The position numbers were made by a program, and so were the translations under genes. From positions 186,001-250,000 of the IMG/VR virus record IMGVR_UViG_3300009545_000018: DNA of 64,000 nt; one strand, written 5' to 3'. This document shows, piece by piece, positions 1,756 to 58,848 of the stretch; within the stretch, counting starts at the first letter, position 1; the number at the start of each line of letters is the position of its first letter. The notes under the pieces are model-generated. The model made no database searches, was not told where the DNA came from, and worked only from the letters and a program-made list of their open reading frames with translations.

Positions 1756-2796
1756 ATGGTAATAAAGTTAGAAAACATAAATCCTAAGTTTAGAGAACAA
1801 ACTGATTTATTATTTTTTGGAAATAATCTGAATTTAGATATAAATAATTTTATTTTATTATTACATAGTAATTATATTCAACATTCAGAATATTTTTTTG
1901 ATAGATTCGTAAAATCTTGTGATATTTTTTGGGAAAATAATCAAGAACTTTGGTTTTATCGATTAAATTTTATCTTTTCTTTACAAGATAAAGGTCTTTC
2001 TAAGAAAGTTTCTTCTTTTTTAGAAAAAAGAATGTCAACCTTAATTCGTCGCAAATTTTGTATTTCTCCTAAATATGATGTGGAATTTTTACATTATTTA
2101 ACTTTATGTCAAATTAAAAAAAATAAAAATGAAGCTTTAGATTTTGCCTATAATTTTTTAGAAGAGTTGCCCTCTATATTCAAAATAGATAGTACTATTG
2201 AAGTCATAAAACATTTTATTCCTTTATTATATTCTGGAGTAGAAGATTATGCTGTAAGTATTTCTAAAAAAATAGATAATTCTTCCAAGAATTTTGTAAT
2301 ACTTAAAGCTTTAGAAAAACATGGTGTAGTTTATAATAGAAAGTATCTTATAGATTTAGCAGGCAATCTTTTAATTGAACGAGGAAATTCCGATAAAAAT
2401 AAAAGATTATTTTTTGCTTTAATTTCTGATTCAGAAATTTTGATTGGTTTAAAATCAAATTTTTCCTCTTTACATAAAAGAAAATTAATTGCATTTTTAA
2501 ATCAATGCGATCATACTTTATTAGAAGATTCTCATTTTAATAATATTAAAAATATTTTGGAATTAGATTGTTCTTTAGCGGAATCAGTAATTAAAATTTA
2601 TATTAGTAAATTATATTCACGACAATATACTCATACTAAATCTAATGCTGATAGATTAATTAGATTAATAAAGAAAGTTTCAATTATTTCTCCTAGAATA
2701 GTTTTTTCTTGTTTATCTGCTAAAAACAAAATGAGTGATATTAAATATATGCTTCCATATTTTCCAGAAGTAAAAAATATAGCGGCATTCTTATAA
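1756..2796 (+). CDS. Hypothetical helical protein ending in the recurrent C-terminal AF motif (NIAAFL)
   Basis: 346-aa ORF, no recognised family. Confidence 0.75.
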   Translation: MVIKLENINPKFREQTDLLFFGNNLNLDINNFILLLHSNYIQHSEYFFDRFVKSCDIFWENNQELWFYRLNFIFSLQDKGLSKKVSSFLEKRMSTLIRRKFCISPKYDVEFLHYLTLCQIKKNKNEALDFAYNFLEELPSIFKIDSTIEVIKHFIPLLYSGVEDYAVSISKKIDNSSKNFVILKALEKHGVVYNRKYLIDLAGNLLIERGNSDKNKRLFFALISDSEILIGLKSNFSSLHKRKLIAFLNQCDHTLLEDSHFNNIKNILELDCSLAESVIKIYISKLYSRQYTHTKSNADRLIRLIKKVSIISPRIVFSCLSAKNKMSDIKYMLPYFPEVKNIAAFL

Positions 2797-2823
2797 TTAG
2801 AAAGTTTAAATTAGGTATTTAAA

Positions 2824-3453
2824 ATGGGTTGTGATATTCATTTTTATATTGAACATTATTATAAAGATAAATGGCATTGTGTTAAGGAACCATCAGAATT
2901 TCGTCCTGAATGGGATAAAGATCCAAATATTAGATGGTATATAGGCAGAAGTTACCATTTATTTGGATTATTAGCGGGCGTTAGATCAAATGTATTACCA
3001 ACACCAATTGCTCCAAGAGGATTTCCTGAAGATGCTTCAGTTTTAGTTAAAAGAGAATTTAAAAAATGGGGTAGTGATGCACATACTCCATCATATATTC
3101 TTTTGACTGAATTATTAGATTTTGAAAATATAATAATAGATCAGCCTATCTATTTAAGCCCTCCAGAATATAAAAACTTTTTGAATAATTCTAATAATTT
3201 AGACATAAATTGTTTATATGAACGTGACGAAGATAATATTATCTCTTTTCAAGAATTAGAAAAAATAAGTAATTTATTGGCTTTTACCAATGATGATACG
3301 TACTTATATAAATATGCTAAAATTGATAATGTAAAATTACCACTTATTAGTTTTATAAATAATAATGTTATTTGGAAAGATGTAGTGCCAAAAATGAAAA
3401 AGTTAAATAAAGATCCATCTAAAGTAAGATGTGTTTTTTGGTTTGATAATTAA
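2824..3453 (+). CDS. Conserved phage hypothetical protein (MGCDIH...FWFDN type)
   Basis: Starts MGCDIH, contains RSYHLFGLLAGVR, PRGFPEDAS and HTPSY, ends VFWFDN. Confidence 0.75.
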   Translation: MGCDIHFYIEHYYKDKWHCVKEPSEFRPEWDKDPNIRWYIGRSYHLFGLLAGVRSNVLPTPIAPRGFPEDASVLVKREFKKWGSDAHTPSYILLTELLDFENIIIDQPIYLSPPEYKNFLNNSNNLDINCLYERDEDNIISFQELEKISNLLAFTNDDTYLYKYAKIDNVKLPLISFINNNVIWKDVVPKMKKLNKDPSKVRCVFWFDN

Positions 3454-4605
3454 ATGACACACCAATTATTTGATATAATTTGTAAAAAACAACCCTATTT
3501 AAAATGGGTTAAACAAAAAACCGTATTGTTAGTTCGTCATGGCAGCCACGCTTATGGAACTAATACCGAATCTTCAGATGAAGATTTTAAAGGAATTTTT
3601 ATTCCTCCCAAAAATTATTATCTGGGAACTGTCCATAGAATTGAACAGTTGGAGCTAAAAGCTCCAGATCCAGATTGTGTAATCTATGAACTTCGTAAAT
3701 TTTTTAATCTTGCTATGGACAACAATCCTAATATTATTGAAGTATTGCATACTTCTCCAGAAGATCACTTATTTGTTGACGAATTGGGCGAGATGATTTT
3801 AGATAGACGTAATGATTTTTTATCTAAAAAAGCGAAACATACGTTCTTGGGTTATAGTGTTAGTCAACTTAAGAGAATAAAAACACATAAAAAATGGTTA
3901 ATGAATCCGCCAGCAAAACCACCCACTCGTGAGCAAATGGGTCTTCCAGATTCAACATTGATTCCACAAGATCAGTTAATGGCAGTGCAAGCCGAAATTC
4001 AAAAAGAATTAGATAAAGCTCAATTTGATTTTATGGACAATTTAGATGAGCCAACTAAAATTGGCATCAGAACAATTATGTCTGAAATGTTGGCTGAATT
4101 AAAAATCACCAGTGATGATCATTGGATGGCAGCTTCTAGAAAAATTGGGCTTTCTGATAATTTCATAGAAATAATGAAGAAAGAAAGAGAGTATACTTCT
4201 AGAAAACGTGAATGGGACCAATATAATAATTGGAAAGCTAATCGCAATCCAACACGAGCAGCTTTAGAAGAAAAATATGGATTTGATTGTAAACACGCTT
4301 ATCACTTGGTTAGGCTAATTAGGATGTGTGAAGAAATTTTAACAACTGGTAAAGTTATTGTAAAGCGCCCGGATAGAGAAGAGCTTCTTTCTATTAGAAA
4401 TGGTGCTTGGTCTTATGAAAAATTAATTGATTTTGCTGAGTCCAAAGAGAAGAACTTAAATGAACTGTATAATACATGTAATGTTATTCCTAAAGTTCCT
4501 GATAAAGAATCTTTAGATAAATTATGCATTCAATTAATAGAAAAATCTATTTCTAACTATTCAATGTATTCTGTTAAAAAGAAATTTTATTCTATGATAA
4601 GATAA
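3454..4605 (+). CDS. Pol-beta superfamily nucleotidyltransferase (RlaP/YcgL-like) with helical insertion
   Basis: GSHAYGTNTESSDEDFKG (GS...DxD) motif; KHAYHLVRLIRMCEEIL C-terminal motif. Confidence 0.8.
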   Translation: MTHQLFDIICKKQPYLKWVKQKTVLLVRHGSHAYGTNTESSDEDFKGIFIPPKNYYLGTVHRIEQLELKAPDPDCVIYELRKFFNLAMDNNPNIIEVLHTSPEDHLFVDELGEMILDRRNDFLSKKAKHTFLGYSVSQLKRIKTHKKWLMNPPAKPPTREQMGLPDSTLIPQDQLMAVQAEIQKELDKAQFDFMDNLDEPTKIGIRTIMSEMLAELKITSDDHWMAASRKIGLSDNFIEIMKKEREYTSRKREWDQYNNWKANRNPTRAALEEKYGFDCKHAYHLVRLIRMCEEILTTGKVIVKRPDREELLSIRNGAWSYEKLIDFAESKEKNLNELYNTCNVIPKVPDKESLDKLCIQLIEKSISNYSMYSVKKKFYSMIR

Positions 4606-22979: not shown

Positions 22980-23765
22980 ATGTCTAATAATACTCTTAAA
23001 GACCGCATTGAGTCTTATCAAAAAACTACAAATTATACCCTGCTTAACAAAGTTCCGCTAATAATTAATGTTAATGGTAAAAATTTTTCAAAAATTACTT
23101 CATTATTAGAAAAGCCTTATGATAGTAATTTTGCTGAATGTATGTTTTCTACTGGATTAAGATTATGTAATGATATTGAAGGTATCGTTTTTGGTTATCA
23201 ACATAACGATGAAATTACTTTAATTATGCGTAATAATCAAAATGATGATACTATTCCTTGGTTTGATAATAATCTACAAAAAATTTGTTCAGTTACCTCT
23301 GCTATTGCAACCATGCATTTTAATGAATGTGCTTCTGAAATTAAAATGAATATGTTGGGAGATCCAATATTTACATGTGAAATATTTCCAGTACCTACAG
23401 TTGCAGAGGCTATTAATACTATGGTGTTTAAGCAACAACAAAATTTTCTTAGTTCTCTTCATTTTGCTTGTTTATACGAATTATTAAAAACTCATGATAA
23501 ACACACTATTAAAGAAATGTTATCTGGATTAAGTTCTGATGAAAAAATTGACTTATTAAAACAAGAAGCTAAAATAGATTTTAATAATTATCCATTACCA
23601 TTTAAACGAGGAATAGGTTATTATAAGGTTCCTAAAATAGTAGATGGTAAAATGAAAGCTAAATGGTTTCTTAATTCGGAATTGCCAATTTTTACTAGAG
23701 ATCAATCTTTTTTAAATAATATTTTAAAAAATGGGATGGATATTTTTAGAGAAAATGGTTTGTAA
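22980..23765 (+). CDS. Thg1-like (3'-5' polymerase fold) protein, first catalytic Asp apparently replaced by Asn
   Basis: LKDRIESYQ, IINVNGKNFSKIT (canonical xDGxxFxxxT), YQHNDEITL, WFDNNLQKICSV, FKRG. Confidence 0.8.
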   Translation: MSNNTLKDRIESYQKTTNYTLLNKVPLIINVNGKNFSKITSLLEKPYDSNFAECMFSTGLRLCNDIEGIVFGYQHNDEITLIMRNNQNDDTIPWFDNNLQKICSVTSAIATMHFNECASEIKMNMLGDPIFTCEIFPVPTVAEAINTMVFKQQQNFLSSLHFACLYELLKTHDKHTIKEMLSGLSSDEKIDLLKQEAKIDFNNYPLPFKRGIGYYKVPKIVDGKMKAKWFLNSELPIFTRDQSFLNNILKNGMDIFRENGL

Positions 23766-24279: not shown

Positions 24280-24633
24280 GGGATCGACATAGTTTCGACG
24301 TGGTTTGAAGTATTGAATTGCAAGTCCCTAATTATTGTCAAAGGGTAATATAAACAATAAACGTTCAAATGCAAACGACAATAGCATTGCTCCATTAGCA
24401 CAAGTTGCTTGATGGATACCTTGAGATGAGATATTTTTGGTAATCAAAAAGGTATTAACCCACTAAAAATAGTTCTTAAATTATCTATGGATTTAAGAAT
24501 AAAATAAACATTAGATAGCCTGTAAAGCAAATTTTACAAATGTTGTTAATTACATTCTTAATTAACTAAACTTGTGAATGATTTTCAATATGAATTATCA
24601 CGGATTCCGGGGCAGTACCGGACGATTCCACCA
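24280..24633 (+). ncRNA. ssrA: tmRNA, one-piece; tag (A)ANDNSIAPLAQVA
   Basis: 5' GGGATCG pairs with 3' CGATTCC-ACCA giving a G3:U70 Ala determinant; TTCGAC 5' motif; tag ORF GCAAACGAC...GCT TGA at 24371-24412; T arm TCCGG-GGCAGTA-CCGGA. Confidence 0.92.
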
Positions 24634-25788: not shown

Positions 25789-25819
25789 TATTGTTATATA
25801 TAAATTAGGAGAAAATTAA

Positions 25820-26401
25820 ATGTTATAGAACGATCTAATCAAAGATATGCAAAACTGCTTACAAACACAAGGGCAGTCTATTTATCAGCACGGGCTCTCA
25901 GTAAAAGAGCATTATTTTGATTTATTATTTATGTTAAAAGAAAATACCGCACTTCCAGGATGGAGGTTACCAGAATGGTTTTTTCAATATCGAGAACAAA
26001 TATTAAATATATTATTGCCCGAAGATATTGTTAAAGAATATCTTATATTTCATGATTGCGGCAAACCTTATTGTTTACTAATTGATGAAGAAGGTGGTAG
26101 ACATTTTCCAAATCATGCAGATAAATCTTATGATATTTGGTTAAAAGTGGGCGGCAATATACAAGCAGCTAAACTTATGAAAATGGATATGTTAATTCAT
26201 AAAATGAAGGCTGTAGATATTGACCAATTTATAAAAAATCCAGAAGCTATTACACTACTTTTAAGTGGATTAGCTGAGACACACTCTAACGCTAAAATGT
26301 TTGGAGGAATAGAATCAGAATCATTTAAGATTAAGTGGAATCAAATTAACAAACGTGGTAAGGTTATTTGTAACAAATTATTTAATACAAAGGAAAAATA
26401 A
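25820..26401 (+). CDS. HD-domain protein with in-frame amber at codon 3 (ORF track starts it at 25847)
   Basis: AGGAG (25807-11), 8 nt, then ATG TTA TAG AAC GAT CTA ATC AAA GAT ATG in frame with the 184-aa ORF; QHG...FHDCGKP...HFPNHA HD motifs. Confidence 0.75.
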
Positions 26402-26746
26402 ATGTCGTAGATTCAATCAAATGATAAATTATATGTTGTGACTCGTGAAGATATTTCAAAAGGATATCAAGGAGTGCAAGGTATACACGCAGCAATTCAG
26501 TTTGCAATTGAACATCCTCAACTTAATAAAGAATGGTTTGAGAAATCTAATTATTTAGGATTTCTATCTGTAAATAATGAAAAAGATTTATTAGATTTGT
26601 CTCAAAAAGCATTAGAACTAGGAATTGAGTTGTCTATATTTAGAGAGCCAGATATAGATAATGCAGTAACTGCAATAGCCTTGGCGCCAGGCAAGAAAAG
26701 TAAAAAACTTTGCAGCAAACTAAATTTAGCTATGAAAGAAAAATAA
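26402..26746 (+). CDS. PTH2-fold (peptidyl-tRNA hydrolase 2/PTRHD1-like) protein with in-frame amber at codon 3 (ORF track starts it at 26438)
   Basis: AAGGA SD and TAA-ATG coupling; ATG TCG TAG ATT CAA TCA AAT GAT AAA TTA TAT GTT GTG; KLYVVTREDI...QGIHAA...FREPDI...VTAIALAP. Confidence 0.8.
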
Positions 26747-26752
26747 ATTTAT

Positions 26753-26874
26753 GCGTCAGTAGCTCAATTAAAGTGAAAGTAGTACATTAACGTGATGTAT
26801 AATAAATGAGTATCTTAAGACCGAGCAGTCCATATTTAATGGAAAGGATGCAAGTGCAAATCTTGCCTGGCGCC
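26753..26874 (+). tRNA. tRNA-like RNA (UUU, Lys-like) with a 57-nt D-loop
   Basis: GCGTCAG/CTGGCGC acceptor, D-stem GCTC (26762-65)/GAGC (26823-26), anticodon loop TA-TTT-AA, GCAAG-TGCAAAT-CTTGC T arm; no encoded CCA. Confidence 0.65.
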
Positions 26875-26880
26875 CTATAT

Positions 26881-26954
26881 TCTCCTGTAAGTTCAGCGGT
26901 TAGAACTATGCTCCCTAAAAGCATTGGTCGTAGGTTCGAATCCTACCAGGAGAG
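26881..26954 (+). tRNA. Amber suppressor tRNA (CUA) #1, U1-A72/G73 body
   Basis: TCTCCTG/CAGGAGA acceptor, ATGCT-CCCTAAA-AGCAT anticodon arm (CTA at 26915-17), GTAGG-TTCGAAT-CCTAC T arm; C33; followed by CAA, not CCA. Confidence 0.8.
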
Positions 26955-26959
26955 CAAAT

Positions 26960-27035
26960 GGTTTGTTAGCTCAGTGATTAGAGCAGAGGATTCTAAAACC
27001 TTTGGTCGTGAGTTTGAATCTCACACAAACCACCA
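26960..27035 (+). tRNA. Amber suppressor tRNA (CUA) #2
   Basis: GGTTTGT/ACAAACC acceptor, GCTC/GAGC D-stem, loop TT-CTA-AA (26993-95), GTGAG-TTTGAAT-CTCAC T arm, A73 and encoded CCA. Confidence 0.85.
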
Positions 27036-27545
27036 ATGAAAAAGTTGCTATTAGAAATAGAATTGATACCAGCATCTTCATGGTATAGCAACGTCAGATC
27101 AAACGTAACTAAAAAGCAATGGGATATTATTAGAAATAAAGTTTATTCTGAAGCCTATAATCTTTGTCAAATATGTGGTGAGCAAGGAAACAAGCACCCA
27201 GTTGAATGTCATGAAATGTGGGAATTTGATGATTTTAAATTAATACAAAAATTAATAGGAATGATAGCATTATGTCCAATGTGTCACGCTACTAAACATT
27301 ATGGTTTATCAAAAATACAAGGTAAAGAAGAGATAATTTTTAATCATTTTATAAAAATTAATAATATTGACAAGGTAGCGGTAAAGCACTACATTGATTC
27401 TGTTTTTAAAATTTGGGAAACACGTAGCCAAAAAGAATGGGAATTAGATATTTCCATATTAAAAAACTATGGAGTAGATATTTATGAATCCAATAATTCA
27501 AAAAAAGATAGAGTTGTTAAAAAATCAACAACAAAAAATAGATGA
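27036..27545 (+). CDS. HNH-type (treble-clef) nuclease-like protein
   Basis: IELIPASSWYSNVRS, CQICG, ECHEMW, IALCPMCH. Confidence 0.78.
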   Translation: MKKLLLEIELIPASSWYSNVRSNVTKKQWDIIRNKVYSEAYNLCQICGEQGNKHPVECHEMWEFDDFKLIQKLIGMIALCPMCHATKHYGLSKIQGKEEIIFNHFIKINNIDKVAVKHYIDSVFKIWETRSQKEWELDISILKNYGVDIYESNNSKKDRVVKKSTTKNR

Positions 27546-27885
27546 AGAAAAAGCAAAACAAGAACAAATTAGACGACAAATTGAATTGAAAAAAATAGAA
27601 AGCAAAGTCCCAGAAGCCAAAATTTGGGTCGAAAACTTTTTATTTGATTTAATAGCCAAAGAAGATTTAAAAATAGATGATTTAAATAAACATAGATATA
27701 GAGATGAACATCTGCCTAAGGAATTAGAGTTGTTTCATATCCCTGATAATATTCCTATCGAATCTATAGTTAAAGCAATTAAAACTTTTAGTGGTCTTTA
27801 TGTAAGAGAATCTTGGCAACCTGCCACACATGATATTGATGGTCCTAGTTATCCAGCATATATGGCATATTATGTTAGATGGTAA
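27484..27885 (+). CDS. Hypothetical protein with N-terminal coiled coil
   Basis: GGAG SD; 133 aa. Confidence 0.65.
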   Translation: MNPIIQKKIELLKNQQQKIDEEKAKQEQIRRQIELKKIESKVPEAKIWVENFLFDLIAKEDLKIDDLNKHRYRDEHLPKELELFHIPDNIPIESIVKAIKTFSGLYVRESWQPATHDIDGPSYPAYMAYYVRW

Positions 27886-28199: not shown

Positions 28200-28718
28200 A
28201 TGATTACTAAGAATAGAGTTAATTTTCAAATAAAAGTGTTGCAAGTTAGATTGATTGATAGTAATGGAGATAATGTTGGAATAATTTCAACACAAGAAGC
28301 TCTAAAAAAAGCCAGAGAACAAAACTTAGATCTTGTTGAAATTAACTCTAAATCATTGCCGCCGGTTTGTAAAATTATTGATTATGGTAAGTTTAAGTAT
28401 GATGAAAAAAAGAAACAAAACGAAGCTAAAAAGAATCATAAAGTTCAAGAATTAAAAGAAATTACTTTTCGCCCTACTACTGATGAGAATGATTTAAATC
28501 ATAAATTGGCTTCTGCACGGAGTTTTCTTGAAGAAGGCGACAAAGTAAAATTTACTATTAGATTTAGAGGTAGAGAAATTGTTCATCCAGAAGTAGGTAG
28601 AGATAGAATTCTTTGGTTATTAGAACAATTAAAGGACATAATTGCAGTACCTCCTCCAATTTCAATGGAAGGGAAATTCATGTCGGTTGTAGTAATGCCA
28701 AGTAAAAAAGGTAACTAA
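28200..28718 (+). CDS. infC: Translation initiation factor IF-3
   Basis: RVNFQI..VRLID, ALKKAREQNLDLVEI, PPVCKIIDYGKFKY, KEITFRP, GDKVKFTIRFRGRE. Confidence 0.95.
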   Translation: MITKNRVNFQIKVLQVRLIDSNGDNVGIISTQEALKKAREQNLDLVEINSKSLPPVCKIIDYGKFKYDEKKKQNEAKKNHKVQELKEITFRPTTDENDLNHKLASARSFLEEGDKVKFTIRFRGREIVHPEVGRDRILWLLEQLKDIIAVPPPISMEGKFMSVVVMPSKKGN

Positions 28719-57600: not shown

Positions 57601-58848
57601 ATGCAAATTGAAATAAAAGAATTGGAACCATGTAAATTATTAGTTAGTTATGAGGCAGATGCCGATCAAATACTAAATAAACGCGGAGAAGTTATTAATG
57701 TTTTTAAAAAAGCTCCAGTACCAGGTTTTCGTCCTGGTAAAGCTAGTGTGGAGGCAATTAAAAAACATTATCGAGATCAAATTGAATCTTCTTTAAAAAG
57801 GGCTTTAGCAGAAGATGCGTATCATAATACTTTATTTGAAAAAAAGATTAAACCACATGGTGCTCCTAAATTTACCACAGCAATGTTGAGTGATGGTAAA
57901 TTTACTTGTGAATTTGAAGTGTTAACTAAACCTATTTTTGATTTAGCTCCATTTAAAGGAATAAATATTCCTCGCCCCGCCAATGTGCAAAACCCCGTAG
58001 AAATCACAGAAAGTATTTTACAAGACTTGCGTGTTCGTGGTGGAGAAATTGTACCATATACTGAAAATGATTTTGTTCAGGAAGGTGATAATATTATTTT
58101 AGATTATACTGGAATGATAGATGGTGAAAAACAAGATTCTCTTTCGGCTGAAGGTGAAATGTTAACAGTTGGTCTTAGTAAATTAAAAGAGTTTGATGAT
58201 AATTTGTTAGGGATGAGCATTGGCGATACTCGTAAATTTAATATAGTAGTTCCTGAACATGGATTACCTTCTTTAAAGGGTAAAACTATTAATTTTACAG
58301 TTACTTTAACTATGGGGTCTAAGAATTTACTATGTCCATTAGACGATCAATTAGCAATTAAATTTGGAAAAAATTCTTTTTCTGAATTAAAAGAGTACGT
58401 TAATGGATTAGCTATTAGTAAAGCAGAAGATGATAGAAGAACTGCCTTATTAGAGTCTATTGTTAATCGTATTGTAGATGATAATAAGTTTGAAGTTCCA
58501 CATTGGGCTTCTTTATCTGAAGCGCAATATTTGGCACATAAATCTAATGTTAATTGGGATACAAGTATTGATGAAGATAAAGAAAGATTTTTAGCTCTTG
58601 CGGAAAAAAATTGCAAACTTGCTCTAATTCTTGATAAGATTAGAGAAGAAGAGCCGGAAGCCCAAATAAGTGATCAAGAAGTTTTTGATATGATTAAACA
58701 AAATATTGCTAAATCAAAATCAGATAAATCTCCAGATGAAATAATTAAAGAACATTCAAAAACAGGATATTTACAAATTCTGTTTTCAAGAATTAAAGAT
58801 GAACATACATTAGATTTTATTGTTAAATCAATAAATATTATAGAATAA
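57601..58848 (+). CDS. tig: Trigger factor
   Basis: VPGFRPGKA ribosome-binding loop; FKBP domain (VQEGDNIILDYTG, FDDNLLGMSIGD); C-terminal helical domain. Confidence 0.92.
   Translation: MQIEIKELEPCKLLVSYEADADQILNKRGEVINVFKKAPVPGFRPGKASVEAIKKHYRDQIESSLKRALAEDAYHNTLFEKKIKPHGAPKFTTAMLSDGKFTCEFEVLTKPIFDLAPFKGINIPRPANVQNPVEITESILQDLRVRGGEIVPYTENDFVQEGDNIILDYTGMIDGEKQDSLSAEGEMLTVGLSKLKEFDDNLLGMSIGDTRKFNIVVPEHGLPSLKGKTINFTVTLTMGSKNLLCPLDDQLAIKFGKNSFSELKEYVNGLAISKAEDDRRTALLESIVNRIVDDNKFEVPHWASLSEAQYLAHKSNVNWDTSIDEDKERFLALAEKNCKLALILDKIREEEPEAQISDQEVFDMIKQNIAKSKSDKSPDEIIKEHSKTGYLQILFSRIKDEHTLDFIVKSINIIE

What the first reader, a model, noticed from the sequence alone, without database searches (positions are those of the whole stretch)
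25807..27035. Candidate amber-gated operon: two genes with TAG at codon 3, directly followed by their own CUA suppressor tRNAs
Seen: both genes of the pair read SD-ATG-NNN-TAG-A in frame with the rest of the protein (ATG TTA TAG at 25820; ATG TCG TAG at 26402). The two genes are coupled by TAA-ATG, and the next features are a tRNA array with two CUA anticodons (26915-17, 26993-95). TAG occurs in no other accepted gene body and ends only one of about 90 genes read by eye. Established: CUA tRNAs insert an amino acid at UAG, and UAG followed by A is a leaky, easily suppressed context in E. coli. Inference: full-length HD and PTH2-fold proteins are made only when charged suppressor tRNA is available. 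That would be a local stop-codon switch (a timer, or a sensor of tRNA integrity or aminoacylation), not genome-wide recoding. The same codon position in two adjacent genes argues against sequencing error or decay. I do not know of a described HD+PTH2+tRNA-CUA module.
Basis: partly seen in the sequence, partly recalled or inferred. Interest (0 to 1): 0.95.

Follow-up and report, generated by a model that had tools for sequence, protein, structure and literature searches.

The report
Amber-codon gate on phage tRNA enzymes
A huge phage puts a TAG stop codon at codon 3 of two neighbouring genes for enzymes that work on tRNA ends, next to two tRNAs that can read TAG; over a hundred other large phages keep this layout, including cultured ones whose suppressor tRNAs had no known target.

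Summary
Both genes read SD-ATG-NNN-TAG in frame (TAG at 25826-28 and 26408-10), are joined TAA-ATG, and are followed by two tRNA(CUA) genes. No other gene in the 64-kb window carries an in-frame TAG, and TAG ends 1 of 92 crude genes.

Comparative data settle the main question. In IMG/VR relatives (38-100% identity), the first in-frame stop upstream of the conserved core is TAG, with a start codon just before it, in 59/63 unique HD-like genes and 62/66 unique PTH2-like genes. It is never TAA or TGA used in that way. A tRNA(CUA) lies within 6 kb of 57/62 gated PTH2 genes.

Cultured phages share the feature: XacN1, RsoM2USA, ME3, Arash and the GAP32/fHe-Yen9-04 clade. The XacN1 authors reported that they could not find targets for its suppressor tRNAs.

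The residues between the TAG and the first downstream start are conserved as protein, through synonymous codon changes. Ungated homologues translate them from an ordinary ATG.

The proteins are a Pth2-fold hydrolase and an HD phosphohydrolase closest to the HD region of CCA-adding enzymes. They are fused in either order in some phages.

Best reading: a local, suppressor-tRNA-dependent translational gate. Its purpose is inferred, not shown. I found no prior description.

The parts
25807..25811 (+). Shine-Dalgarno AGGAG, 8 nt before ATG 25820
   Evidence: There is no comparable motif before the in-frame ATG at 25847.
25820..26401 (+). HD-like phosphohydrolase gene read through the gate: ATG-TTA-TAG, then 190 codons, then TAA
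   Evidence: Matches phrog_14850 at 1.3e-63. Conserved His, HD, His, His and Asp positions. Model pLDDT 94.2. The best sequence and fold matches are class-II tRNA nucleotidyltransferases 3wfo-3wfs.
25826..25828 (+). Gate 1: in-frame TAG at codon 3, followed by A
26390..26394 (+). Shine-Dalgarno AAGGA, 7 nt before ATG 26402
26402..26746 (+). PTH2-fold hydrolase gene read through the gate: ATG-TCG-TAG, then 111 codons, then TAA
   Evidence: Pfam PTH2 1.2e-8, starting at Lys 26426. PDB 2zv3 at 1.8e-8. Model pLDDT 95.6, TM 0.73-0.78 to Pth2 structures.
26408..26410 (+). Gate 2: in-frame TAG at codon 3, followed by ATT
26753..26874 (+). tRNA-like gene with a 54-nt insertion in the D-loop and an odd anticodon loop; role unknown
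   Evidence: Rfam tRNA 38.7 bits. The fold keeps the acceptor, anticodon and T arms. ARAGORN does not call it.
26881..26955 (+). tRNA(CUA) no. 1: anticodon 26915-17, U1-A72, G73, C33, no encoded CCA
26960..27035 (+). tRNA(CUA) no. 2: anticodon 26993-95, A73, encoded CCA, A-A mismatch at positions 31-39
24280..24633 (+). Phage tmRNA. It shares the translation island; a link to the gate is only inferred.
   Evidence: Rfam RF00023 51.4 bits, gathering score 47

Best explanation
The module is a suppressor-tRNA-dependent translational gate.

How it works: ribosomes start at the SD-preceded ATG, make a dipeptide and meet UAG at codon 3. If release factor 1 wins, a dipeptide is released and no enzyme is made. 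If one of the phage's own tRNA(CUA) molecules, charged by a host synthetase, decodes the UAG, the full-length protein is made. The output of the HD-like and PTH2-like enzymes therefore follows the ratio of active suppressor tRNA to RF1 in the infected cell.

The two enzymes belong together. They are adjacent here and fused in either order in other phages. Their folds suggest that both act on the 3' end of tRNA: ester hydrolysis by the Pth2 fold, and phosphoester hydrolysis by an HD domain of the kind found in CCA-adding enzymes.

Shown here: the anatomy, its conservation, its co-location with tRNA(CUA), protein-level selection across the gate, and the folds.

Inferred: that read-through occurs (my estimate about 0.8), and the purpose. 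My preferred purpose is to couple the dose of tRNA-end recycling or repair enzymes to the level of UAG suppression. This could be feed-forward, clearing peptidyl-tRNA and stalled-ribosome by-products of read-through together with the neighbouring tmRNA. Or it could be feedback that holds the charged suppressor at a set point. My estimate for this group of purposes is about 0.4. A simple delay timer is about 0.25.
For: 1. Anatomy at the stated coordinates, with SD motifs placed for the upstream ATGs.
2. Conservation: 59/63 unique HD-like and 62/66 unique PTH2-like loci have a start codon, 1-12 codons and then TAG, most often with TAG as codon 3. In none of these loci is a TAA or TGA used that way; the few that have TAA or TGA upstream start from an ordinary ATG after it. 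The codons between ATG and TAG and their number vary freely, while the TAG stays.
3. In 13 distinct loci that carry both genes, both are gated. PTH2-HD fusions are gated once, at the N-terminus. The XacN1 HD-PTH2 fusion reads ATG-AAG-TAG.
4. tRNA(CUA) lies within 6 kb of 57/62 gated PTH2 genes. The survey loci hold 146 CUA tRNAs against 3 UCA.
5. The base after the TAG is A 84, G 29, C 8, T 0. By my recollection of E. coli work, UAG-U is the strongest RF1 context.
6. The segment after the TAG is coding. Leu at +3 is written TTA/CTA/CTC/TTG, Ile at +4 ATT/ATC, Asp at +6 GAT/GAC. It forms a helix at pLDDT 94 in the HD model and strand 1 in the PTH2 model. Ungated homologues start upstream of it with a normal ATG and keep the same internal Met.
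7. TAG also sits deep inside these genes in some lineages, where re-initiation cannot rescue the protein: about codon 47 in GAP32 and fHe-Yen9-04, and internal sites in L049/L213, L084 and L222.
8. No RNA structure flanks the TAGs (z -0.28 and +0.93), which fits decoding by a cognate tRNA.
9. Other genes are at background for the pattern: 84 TAG against 108 TAA and 83 TGA.
Against: There are no expression, proteomic or ribosome-profiling data, so read-through is inferred.

The amino-acid identity of the two tRNAs is unresolved. Similarity to reference tRNAs is weak and mixed. tRNA 1 has C33 and tRNA 2 has a mismatched 31-39 pair, so their efficiency is unknown.

An in-frame ATG (Met 7) follows the HD gate, and ATT follows the PTH2 gate in 37/62 loci. 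A shorter or non-canonically started product cannot be excluded.

In mycobacteriophages Myrna and Catera the TAG sits directly before a GTG with good SD spacing, so there the gate reading is ambiguous.

The survey used sequence patterns that reach one subclade. In the wider family (670 clusters at 50% identity), roughly a third of the top 150 look ungated. Loci are phylogenetically related, so the counts are not independent events.

Only 34/59 gated HD loci show a CUA tRNA within 6 kb.

Only 64 kb of a 447-kb genome was examined for other in-frame TAGs.
Confidence: 0.75

Rival explanations
1. Leader mini-ORF with downstream initiation. ATG-NNN-TAG is a 2-5 codon upstream ORF. The enzymes are made by initiation or termination-reinitiation just after it (Met 7 in the HD gene; ATT, GTT or GTG in the PTH2 gene), independently of the CUA tRNAs.
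For: Met 7 is ATG in 62/63 HD loci. ATT, a known weak start codon, follows the TAG in 37/62 PTH2 loci. In Myrna and Catera the annotated GTG start directly follows the TAG with ideal SD spacing. Gene callers already predict such products (43 of the top 150 clusters start at Met 7).
Against: A leader ORF could end in any stop, yet it is TAG in 121 gated loci and never TAA or TGA. The same Met is conserved as an internal residue in ungated homologues. The residues between the TAG and Met 7 show synonymous-codon conservation and form a confident helix. 60/62 PTH2 loci have no canonical start before the invariant Lys-Leu, and GTT and GTA (16 loci) are not start codons. Internal TAGs in the GAP32 clade cannot be bypassed this way. 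The tight linkage to tRNA(CUA) would be left unexplained.
Confidence: 0.1
2. Incipient genome-wide recoding (code 15). TAG is simply a rare sense codon in these phages, and its presence in these two genes has no regulatory meaning.
For: TAG ends only 1 of 92 genes in the window. The phages encode CUA tRNAs. Some homologues carry extra internal TAGs. Borges et al. propose stop-codon depletion followed by gain of a suppressor tRNA as the route to recoding.
Against: No other gene in the window or in the neighbourhoods of relatives carries an in-frame TAG above background. TAG still ends about 8% of crude genes in relatives and 18 genes in XacN1. A neutral sense codon would not hold one position, in a stretch whose neighbouring residues are not conserved, in two families across sequences down to about 40% identity.
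Confidence: 0.1
3. Bar-like minigene. The 2-5 codon ORF is the functional unit. It produces short peptidyl-tRNAs that drop off the ribosome, as lambda bar minigenes do, and it sits in front of a Pth gene for that reason.
For: The form matches: SD, ATG, one or a few codons, stop. The link with a peptidyl-tRNA hydrolase fold is suggestive. The bar/Pth connection is from my own knowledge of the lambda literature.
Against: The second codon is not conserved, whereas bar toxicity depends on the particular tRNA sequestered. Neither the exclusive use of TAG nor the in-frame continuation into the conserved protein is needed for a minigene. The HD gene has the same feature.
Confidence: 0.03
4. Artefact or decay: sequencing errors or pseudogenes.
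For: None beyond the presence of a stop codon in the reading frame.
Against: The same feature occurs in more than 120 independent metagenome assemblies and in finished genomes of cultured phages. Strong protein-level conservation continues after the TAG.
Confidence: 0.01

Closest known systems
Stop-codon recoding in phages (TAG read as an amino acid, 'code 15': crAss-like, Lak and other gut phages; Borges et al. preprint 10.1101/2021.08.26.457843; PMC9523058)
   Same: A phage-encoded tRNA(CUA) reads UAG in a host that uses the standard code. Translation of the genes that carry the codon is proposed to wait for the suppressor.
   Different: In those phages, in-frame TAGs are scattered through many genes, mostly late, structural and lysis genes, and the 'code-change' genes themselves are written in standard code. 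Here TAG is confined to one enzyme pair, at a fixed N-terminal position, in otherwise standard-code genomes.
bldA tRNA-Leu(UAA) and TTA codons in Streptomyces (for example adpA; PMC10732093; mechanism from my own knowledge)
   Same: One dedicated tRNA controls translation of a few genes that carry an otherwise avoided codon. The effect is a developmental or timing switch.
   Different: That codon is a rare sense codon in a cellular genome. Here it is a stop codon in competition with RF1. The tRNA is physically linked to its targets, and the codon is placed at the very start of the gene.
prfB (RF2) autoregulation through an early in-frame UGA (from my own knowledge)
   Same: An in-frame stop codon early in the mRNA acts as a sensor of decoding activity at that same stop codon and sets the yield of full-length protein.
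   Different: prfB escapes by a +1 frameshift and senses its own product. Here escape is by a cognate suppressor tRNA, and whether the enzymes act back on that tRNA is unknown.
Synthetic suppressor-tRNA gates and feed-forward loops in E. coli (PMC7969014; PMC13276491)
   Same: An amber codon placed near the N-terminus of a target gene, plus an expressed suppressor tRNA, gives tight tRNA-dependent translation.
   Different: Those circuits are engineered. This appears to be a natural and widespread counterpart.
Archaeal/eukaryotic Pth2 and the HD domain of bacterial CCA-adding enzymes
   Same: Fold and sequence similarity: Pth2 E 1.8e-8 and TM 0.73-0.78; class-II nucleotidyltransferase HD region E 0.015 and TMq up to 0.60.
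   Different: In the alignment to 2zv3, the 'GK' of the Pth2 motif is replaced by an invariant Tyr-Gln, and there is a family-specific FREPDIDN motif. The HD protein stands alone, without the nucleotidyltransferase head. Neither activity has been tested.

Membership tests
Genome-wide TAG-recoded phage (code 15) | In-frame TAG in many genes; coding density collapses under the standard code | tested here: not met
   The window is 94% coding under code 11. Only these two genes carry an in-frame TAG. There is no excess of TAG junctions in relatives.
Genome-wide TAG-recoded phage (code 15) | Phage-encoded tRNA with a CUA anticodon | tested here: met
   Two in the window and 146 in the survey loci.
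Genome-wide TAG-recoded phage (code 15) | TAG not used as a terminator | tested here: inconclusive
   1/92 genes in the window, but about 8% of crude genes in relatives and 18 genes in XacN1.
Pth2 (PF01981) peptidyl-tRNA hydrolase | Pth2 alpha/beta fold over the whole length | tested here: met
   Pfam 35.6 bits against a cut-off of 23. Foldseek TM 0.73-0.78 to 2zv3, 3erj, 1q7s, 1wn2 and 1xty.
Pth2 (PF01981) peptidyl-tRNA hydrolase | Catalytic Lys and Asp of characterised Pth2 enzymes (their roles recalled from memory) | tested here: inconclusive
   In the alignment to 2zv3, the 'GKGK' Lys aligns with an invariant Tyr19-Gln20. An acidic residue is kept in FREPDIDN.
Pth2 (PF01981) peptidyl-tRNA hydrolase | Hydrolysis of peptidyl-tRNA | not testable with these tools
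   Needs an enzyme assay.
HD-superfamily metal-dependent phosphohydrolase | His, His-Asp and Asp metal ligands in an all-helical fold | tested here: met
   Conserved H21; invariant H75-D76, H92, H96, D120, H124. Helical model at pLDDT 94. No Pfam HD model reaches E 0.01. The best matches are the HD region of 3wfo-3wfs, then the PhnZ and PgpH HD domains.
Pyrrolysine system (ARAGORN labels every CUA tRNA 'tRNA-Pyl') | The atypical tRNA-Pyl architecture plus pylS and pylBCD genes | tested here: not met
   Both tRNAs are ordinary 75-76 nt cloverleaves scoring 58-64 bits on the general tRNA model. No pyl genes appeared among the ORFs I scanned against Pfam/PHROGs, but the window was not scanned exhaustively.
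Autoregulatory stop-codon sensor (prfB type) | The gene product changes decoding at its own in-frame stop | not testable with these tools
   The early in-frame stop is present. Any action of the HD or PTH2 protein on tRNA(CUA) or RF1 is unknown.
Lambda bar-type minigene | A short SD-ATG-codon-stop ORF whose effect depends on a particular tRNA and needs no downstream frame | tested here: not met
   The second codon varies freely. The frame always continues into the conserved protein, and the stop is always TAG.

The most novel reading that the evidence does not exclude
The module is a closed-loop homeostat built around a tRNA. The HD and PTH2 enzymes would act on the suppressor tRNA itself, by deacylating or trimming its 3' end, or on the peptidyl-tRNA and stalled-ribosome products that UAG read-through creates. 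The early UAG in their own mRNAs would then measure suppressor activity against RF1 and set it. This would be a natural analogue of RF2 autoregulation, and it would explain why standard-code jumbo phages carry 'orphan' amber suppressors. It would also imply that the suppressor has a separate main job, such as reading through host or phage TAG stops, which needs to be held within bounds.
Probability: 0.25. Interest if true: 0.9.

Novelty: new variant of a known kind. Interest (0 to 1): 0.85.

Why it matters
1. It gives concrete targets to phage suppressor tRNAs whose function was an admitted puzzle. The XacN1 paper states that no target genes could be identified. The RsoM2USA paper only counts UAG triplets.
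2. It is a natural, portable translational switch at a single codon, the design that synthetic biologists built independently (PMC7969014). It comes with many ready-made tRNA and context variants.
3. It links stop-codon suppression to two enzymes that act on tRNA 3' ends, in islands that also hold tmRNA, IF3 and Thg1. That points to an unexplored layer of phage control over translation quality control.
4. It may represent the first step, or a stable alternative, on the path to full stop-codon reassignment.
5. It corrects annotation. Gene callers truncate or split these genes: 43 of the top 150 clusters start at Met 7, Arash gp84c is called as 50 aa, the GAP32 gene is called as three ORFs, and XacN1 ORF364 starts 9 nt too late.

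Tried and rejected
- tRNA isotype by similarity to XacN1 and E. coli tRNAs. The best matches were weak and mixed (Lys, Met, Val, Arg at 0.6-0.78 identity), so there is no call. tRNA 1 has a Gln/Asn-type U1-A72 and G73. One internal TAG aligns with Glu or Gln, which is only a hint.
- A stimulatory RNA structure near the TAGs: none.
- The XacN1 genes flanking its two tRNA-Sup (ORF087 and ORF088) are unrelated to the window's proteins. The real homologue is ORF364, 208 kb away.
- Further amber-gated gene families in 160 loci: nothing above background, only small SD-less clusters.
- Co-variation of the gate codon with other suppressors. Lak-B9 shows ATG-AAT-ATC-TAA upstream of its PTH2-like gene, near a tRNA(UUA), but this is not conserved in Lak-A1, so I treat it as chance. 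Atu_ph07 (UCA suppressor) was not examined.
- Promoter and terminator scans gave no usable operon boundaries.
- Seven literature searches found no description of this module. The library lacks most subscription journals, so absence is not proof.
Full report
**What is in the window.** The window is part of IMG/VR contig UViG_3300009545_000018, which is 447,763 bp long. Its GC content is 27.9%. At 25807-11 an AGGAG precedes ATG 25820, TTA and TAG 25826-28. The frame then runs open to TAA at 26399-401. The next base starts ATG 26402, TCG, TAG 26408-10, preceded by AAGGA at 26390-94, and this frame runs to TAA at 26744-46. ARAGORN and Rfam place two tRNAs with CUA anticodons at 26881-26955 and 26960-27035. 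A third tRNA-like gene at 26753-26874 has a 54-nt insertion in its D-loop. An HNH endonuclease gene starts at 27036, directly after the encoded CCA of the second tRNA. The surroundings form a translation island: a Thg1-like gene (22980-23765), two tRNA-Thr genes, a tmRNA (24280-24633, 51.4 bits) and IF3 (28200-28718).

**Is TAG special in this window?** A crude standard-code gene call covers 94% of the window with 92 genes. They end in TAA 76 times, TGA 15 times and TAG once. Reading through that single terminal TAG would add only nine codons. Twelve genes have TAG as the nearest upstream in-frame stop, but only the two in question have an SD and an ATG just before it. The bare pattern of ATG, a few codons, a stop and then a long open frame is common by chance in this A+T-rich DNA: TAG 3, TAA 6, TGA 5. 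The window alone could not settle the matter.

**Comparative evidence.** Single-sequence scans of IMG/VR returned 26 loci for each protein. Nearly all had the early TAG. Profile scans extended this to 80 loci each. I anchored on the invariant Met 7 of the HD-like protein and the invariant Lys 6 of the PTH2-like protein, then asked which in-frame stop comes first upstream.
- HD-like genes: TAG in 59 of 63 unique loci, TAA in 2, TGA in 2. All 59 have a start codon within 12 codons upstream, most often two codons, which makes TAG codon 3.
- PTH2-like genes: TAG in 64 of 66 unique loci, 62 of them with a start codon close upstream.
- About ten of the HD cases are PTH2-HD fusion proteins, gated once at the fusion's N-terminus.
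- In 13 distinct loci that hold both genes, both are gated.
- The codons between ATG and TAG, and their number, vary freely. The TAG does not.
- The base after the TAG is A 84 times, G 29, C 8 and T never.
- A tRNA(CUA) lies within 6 kb of 57/62 gated PTH2 genes, often within 60-200 nt, and of 34/59 gated HD genes.
- Across the same 160 loci, other genes with the pattern number 84 for TAG, 108 for TAA and 83 for TGA. They form no sizeable families.
- Internal stop junctions between long open frames show no TAG excess.

The recoding is therefore local.

**Cultured phages.**
- Xanthomonas phage XacN1: ORF364 is an HD-PTH2 fusion. Its frame starts ATG-AAG-TAG nine bases upstream of the annotated start. 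The XacN1 paper reports two CUA suppressor tRNAs and says no target genes could be identified.
- Ralstonia phage RsoM2USA: gp91 reads ATG-AAA-TCG-TAG. Its paper notes the CUA tRNA without naming a target.
- Acinetobacter phage ME3: gp266 (PTH2-like) reads ATG-ACT-TAG-ATT, with a CUA tRNA about 450 nt upstream.
- Salmonella phage Arash: its PTH2-like gene reads ATG-CTG-TAG and is annotated only as a 50-residue fragment.
- In ME3 and Arash the HD gene overlaps the end of the gated PTH2 gene and has no gate of its own, which suggests one gate serves both.
- Cronobacter phage GAP32 and Yersinia phage fHe-Yen9-04: the HD-like gene carries its single TAG at about codon 47, inside the domain, and an annotated Sup-CTA tRNA lies 2.7-2.9 kb downstream.
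- Mycobacteriophages Myrna and Catera: RTG-TAG-GTG sits at the start of their PTH2-like gene, and ARAGORN reads a neighbouring tRNA as CUA (GenBank labels it Ser or Arg). SD spacing favours the GTG after the TAG, so this case is ambiguous.

**Is the TAG translated or bypassed?** Four lines of evidence favour translation.
1. The six codons between the HD gate and Met 7 show protein-level selection. Leu is written TTA, CTA, CTC or TTG. Ile is ATT or ATC. Asp is GAT or GAC.
2. These residues form a helix at pLDDT 94 in a model with mean pLDDT 94.2. In the PTH2 model, Lys 6 to Arg 12 form strand 1 (mean pLDDT 95.6). The GTG at 26438 would delete part of that strand. The Pfam and PDB alignments start at the Lys.
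3. Ungated homologues start with an ordinary ATG upstream of the same segment and keep the same Met as an internal residue.
4. Only 2 of 62 gated PTH2 genes have any canonical start codon between the TAG and Lys 6, and the internal TAGs of the GAP32 clade and of L049, L084 and L222 cannot be skipped.

No local RNA structure accompanies the TAGs.

**What the proteins are.** The PTH2-like protein matches archaeal and human Pth2 in sequence (2zv3, E 1.8e-8) and in fold (TM 0.73-0.78). An invariant Tyr-Gln replaces the Gly-Lys motif, and the family has its own FREPDIDN motif. The HD-like protein has the His, His-Asp, His, His and Asp pattern. Its best matches in both sequence (E 0.015) and fold (TMq 0.53-0.60) are the class-II tRNA nucleotidyltransferase structures 3wfo-3wfs, over the region with the FHDxGKP motif. 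These are weak but concordant matches. Fusion in both orders argues that the two act together, plausibly on tRNA 3' ends.

The family is small and almost confined to large phages. It has 670 clusters at 50% identity among 1.84 billion representatives. Only four full-length hits occur in one genome from each of 185,579 prokaryotic species, and at least one of the four (L225) looks phage-derived.

**Limits.**
- The survey patterns reach one subclade. In the wider family, about 43 of the top 150 clusters start exactly at Met 7, as expected for gated genes truncated by gene callers. About 54 have natural N-termini, and about 41 are fusions.
- Ungated examples that I could place had no CUA tRNA nearby: L238 over 16.6 kb, the T4-like phage ZPAH1, and L226-L228. 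The sample is small. Three ungated HD genes (L087, L120, L142) do sit near CUA tRNAs.
- tRNA identity is unresolved.
- Nothing here shows expression.

**Mechanism and purpose.** The gate itself is competition between RF1 and the phage tRNA(CUA) at codon 3, and it is well supported. Its purpose is inferred. Placing the stop at the N-terminus wastes only a dipeptide when the gate is closed. It also sits in a stretch whose neighbouring residues are not conserved, so whatever residue the suppressor inserts may be tolerated. Because both enzymes probably handle tRNA 3' ends and lie beside a tmRNA, I favour coupling of their dose to suppressor activity. This could compensate for the peptidyl-tRNA and non-stop ribosome load that read-through causes, or it could feed back on the charged suppressor. 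A simple delay timer is the main alternative purpose.

**Novelty.** Phage suppressor tRNAs and stop-codon recoding are known. Related principles are also known: codon-gated translation by a dedicated tRNA (bldA), stop-codon sensing (prfB) and engineered amber gates (PMC7969014). A conserved, gene-specific N-terminal amber gate on an HD/PTH2 enzyme pair linked to tRNA(CUA), in otherwise standard-code phages, was not found in seven literature searches. I class it as a new variant of a known kind, of high interest, and directly testable in cultured phages.

Noticed in passing
window 24280-24633 (+): Phage-encoded tmRNA. Rfam RF00023 scores 51.4 bits against a gathering score of 47. ARAGORN misses it. 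It lies 1.2 kb upstream of the gated genes, in an island that also holds Thg1, tRNA-Thr x2 and IF3.
   Followed up: partly
window 26753-26874 (+): tRNA-like gene (Rfam 38.7 bits) with a 54-nt insertion in the D-loop and an anticodon arm reading UAUUUAA (A at position 33, or a 5-nt loop). It may be a pseudo-tRNA, an intron-bearing tRNA or a processing element. It sits between the PTH2-like gene and the first CUA tRNA.
   Followed up: partly
46 unique CUA tRNAs: IMG/VR loci L001-L052 plus cultured-phage loci L053-L064; window tRNA no. 2, 26960-27035: 22 of 46 unique phage CUA tRNAs have a non-Watson-Crick 31-39 pair (C-A, C-U, C-C, A-A), giving a 4-bp anticodon stem. Only 1 of 32 reference tRNAs does. 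Window tRNA no. 1 also has C33 instead of the near-universal U33.
   Followed up: partly
L054 about 2492-3349 (XacN1 ORF364); L061 about 2164-2496 (Arash); L055 2477-3043 (GAP32); L241 3480-4046 (fHe-Yen9-04): Public annotations truncate or split these genes at the TAG. XacN1 ORF364 starts 9 nt too late. The Arash PTH2-like gene is called as a 50-aa gp84c. The GAP32 gene is called as three ORFs and the fHe-Yen9-04 gene as two.
   Followed up: yes
L058 1966-2037 (Myrna), L059 2114-2187 (Catera), L061 3482-3556 (Arash): tRNAs annotated in GenBank as Ser, Arg and Phe fold best with a CUA anticodon in ARAGORN. They sit next to the PTH2-like gene. About 200 cluster C mycobacteriophage records carry this gene, with RTG-TAG-GTG at its start.
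   Followed up: partly
window 27036-27545 (+): HNH endonuclease gene (phrog_5200, 1.2e-52) whose ATG directly follows the encoded CCA of tRNA(CUA) no. 2. This looks like a homing-endonuclease insertion beside the tRNA array. Related HNH genes occur next to the tRNAs in other jumbo phages.
   Followed up: no
window 27469-27477, upstream of ORF 27484-27885: A third ATG-GAG-TAG lies in frame with the next ORF, without an SD and inside the 3' end of the HNH gene. The closest relative (L066) has a similar arrangement. It is probably chance, but it was not excluded as a third gated gene.
   Followed up: partly
L010 2229-2306, L021 4694-4772, L034 4510-4579, L041 2421-2501, L046 6983-7062: ARAGORN reports tRNAs with 2- or 4-base 'anticodons' (odd-sized anticodon loops) close to or directly beside tRNA arrays that include the CUA tRNAs in several relatives.
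   Followed up: no
L232 (Lak-B9) and L235 (Lak-A1), tRNA at about 2250-2360: Lak megaphages have a PTH2-like homologue without a TAG gate, and a tRNA with a UUA anticodon about 650-750 nt upstream. An upstream in-frame ATG-AAT-ATC-TAA in Lak-B9 is not conserved in Lak-A1.
   Followed up: partly
window 57601-58848, 3454-4605, 22980-23765: The phage encodes a trigger-factor homologue, an RlaP (RNA-repair pathway) family protein and a Thg1-like tRNA-His guanylyltransferase. This adds to an unusually rich complement of translation and RNA-repair genes.
   Followed up: no
L214 about 6689 and L217 about 5606: Two related proteins of 82-84 aa lie near the PTH2-like gene, each preceded by ATG-x-TAG in frame. 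They could be a third gated family, but there are only two members and no SD.
   Followed up: no
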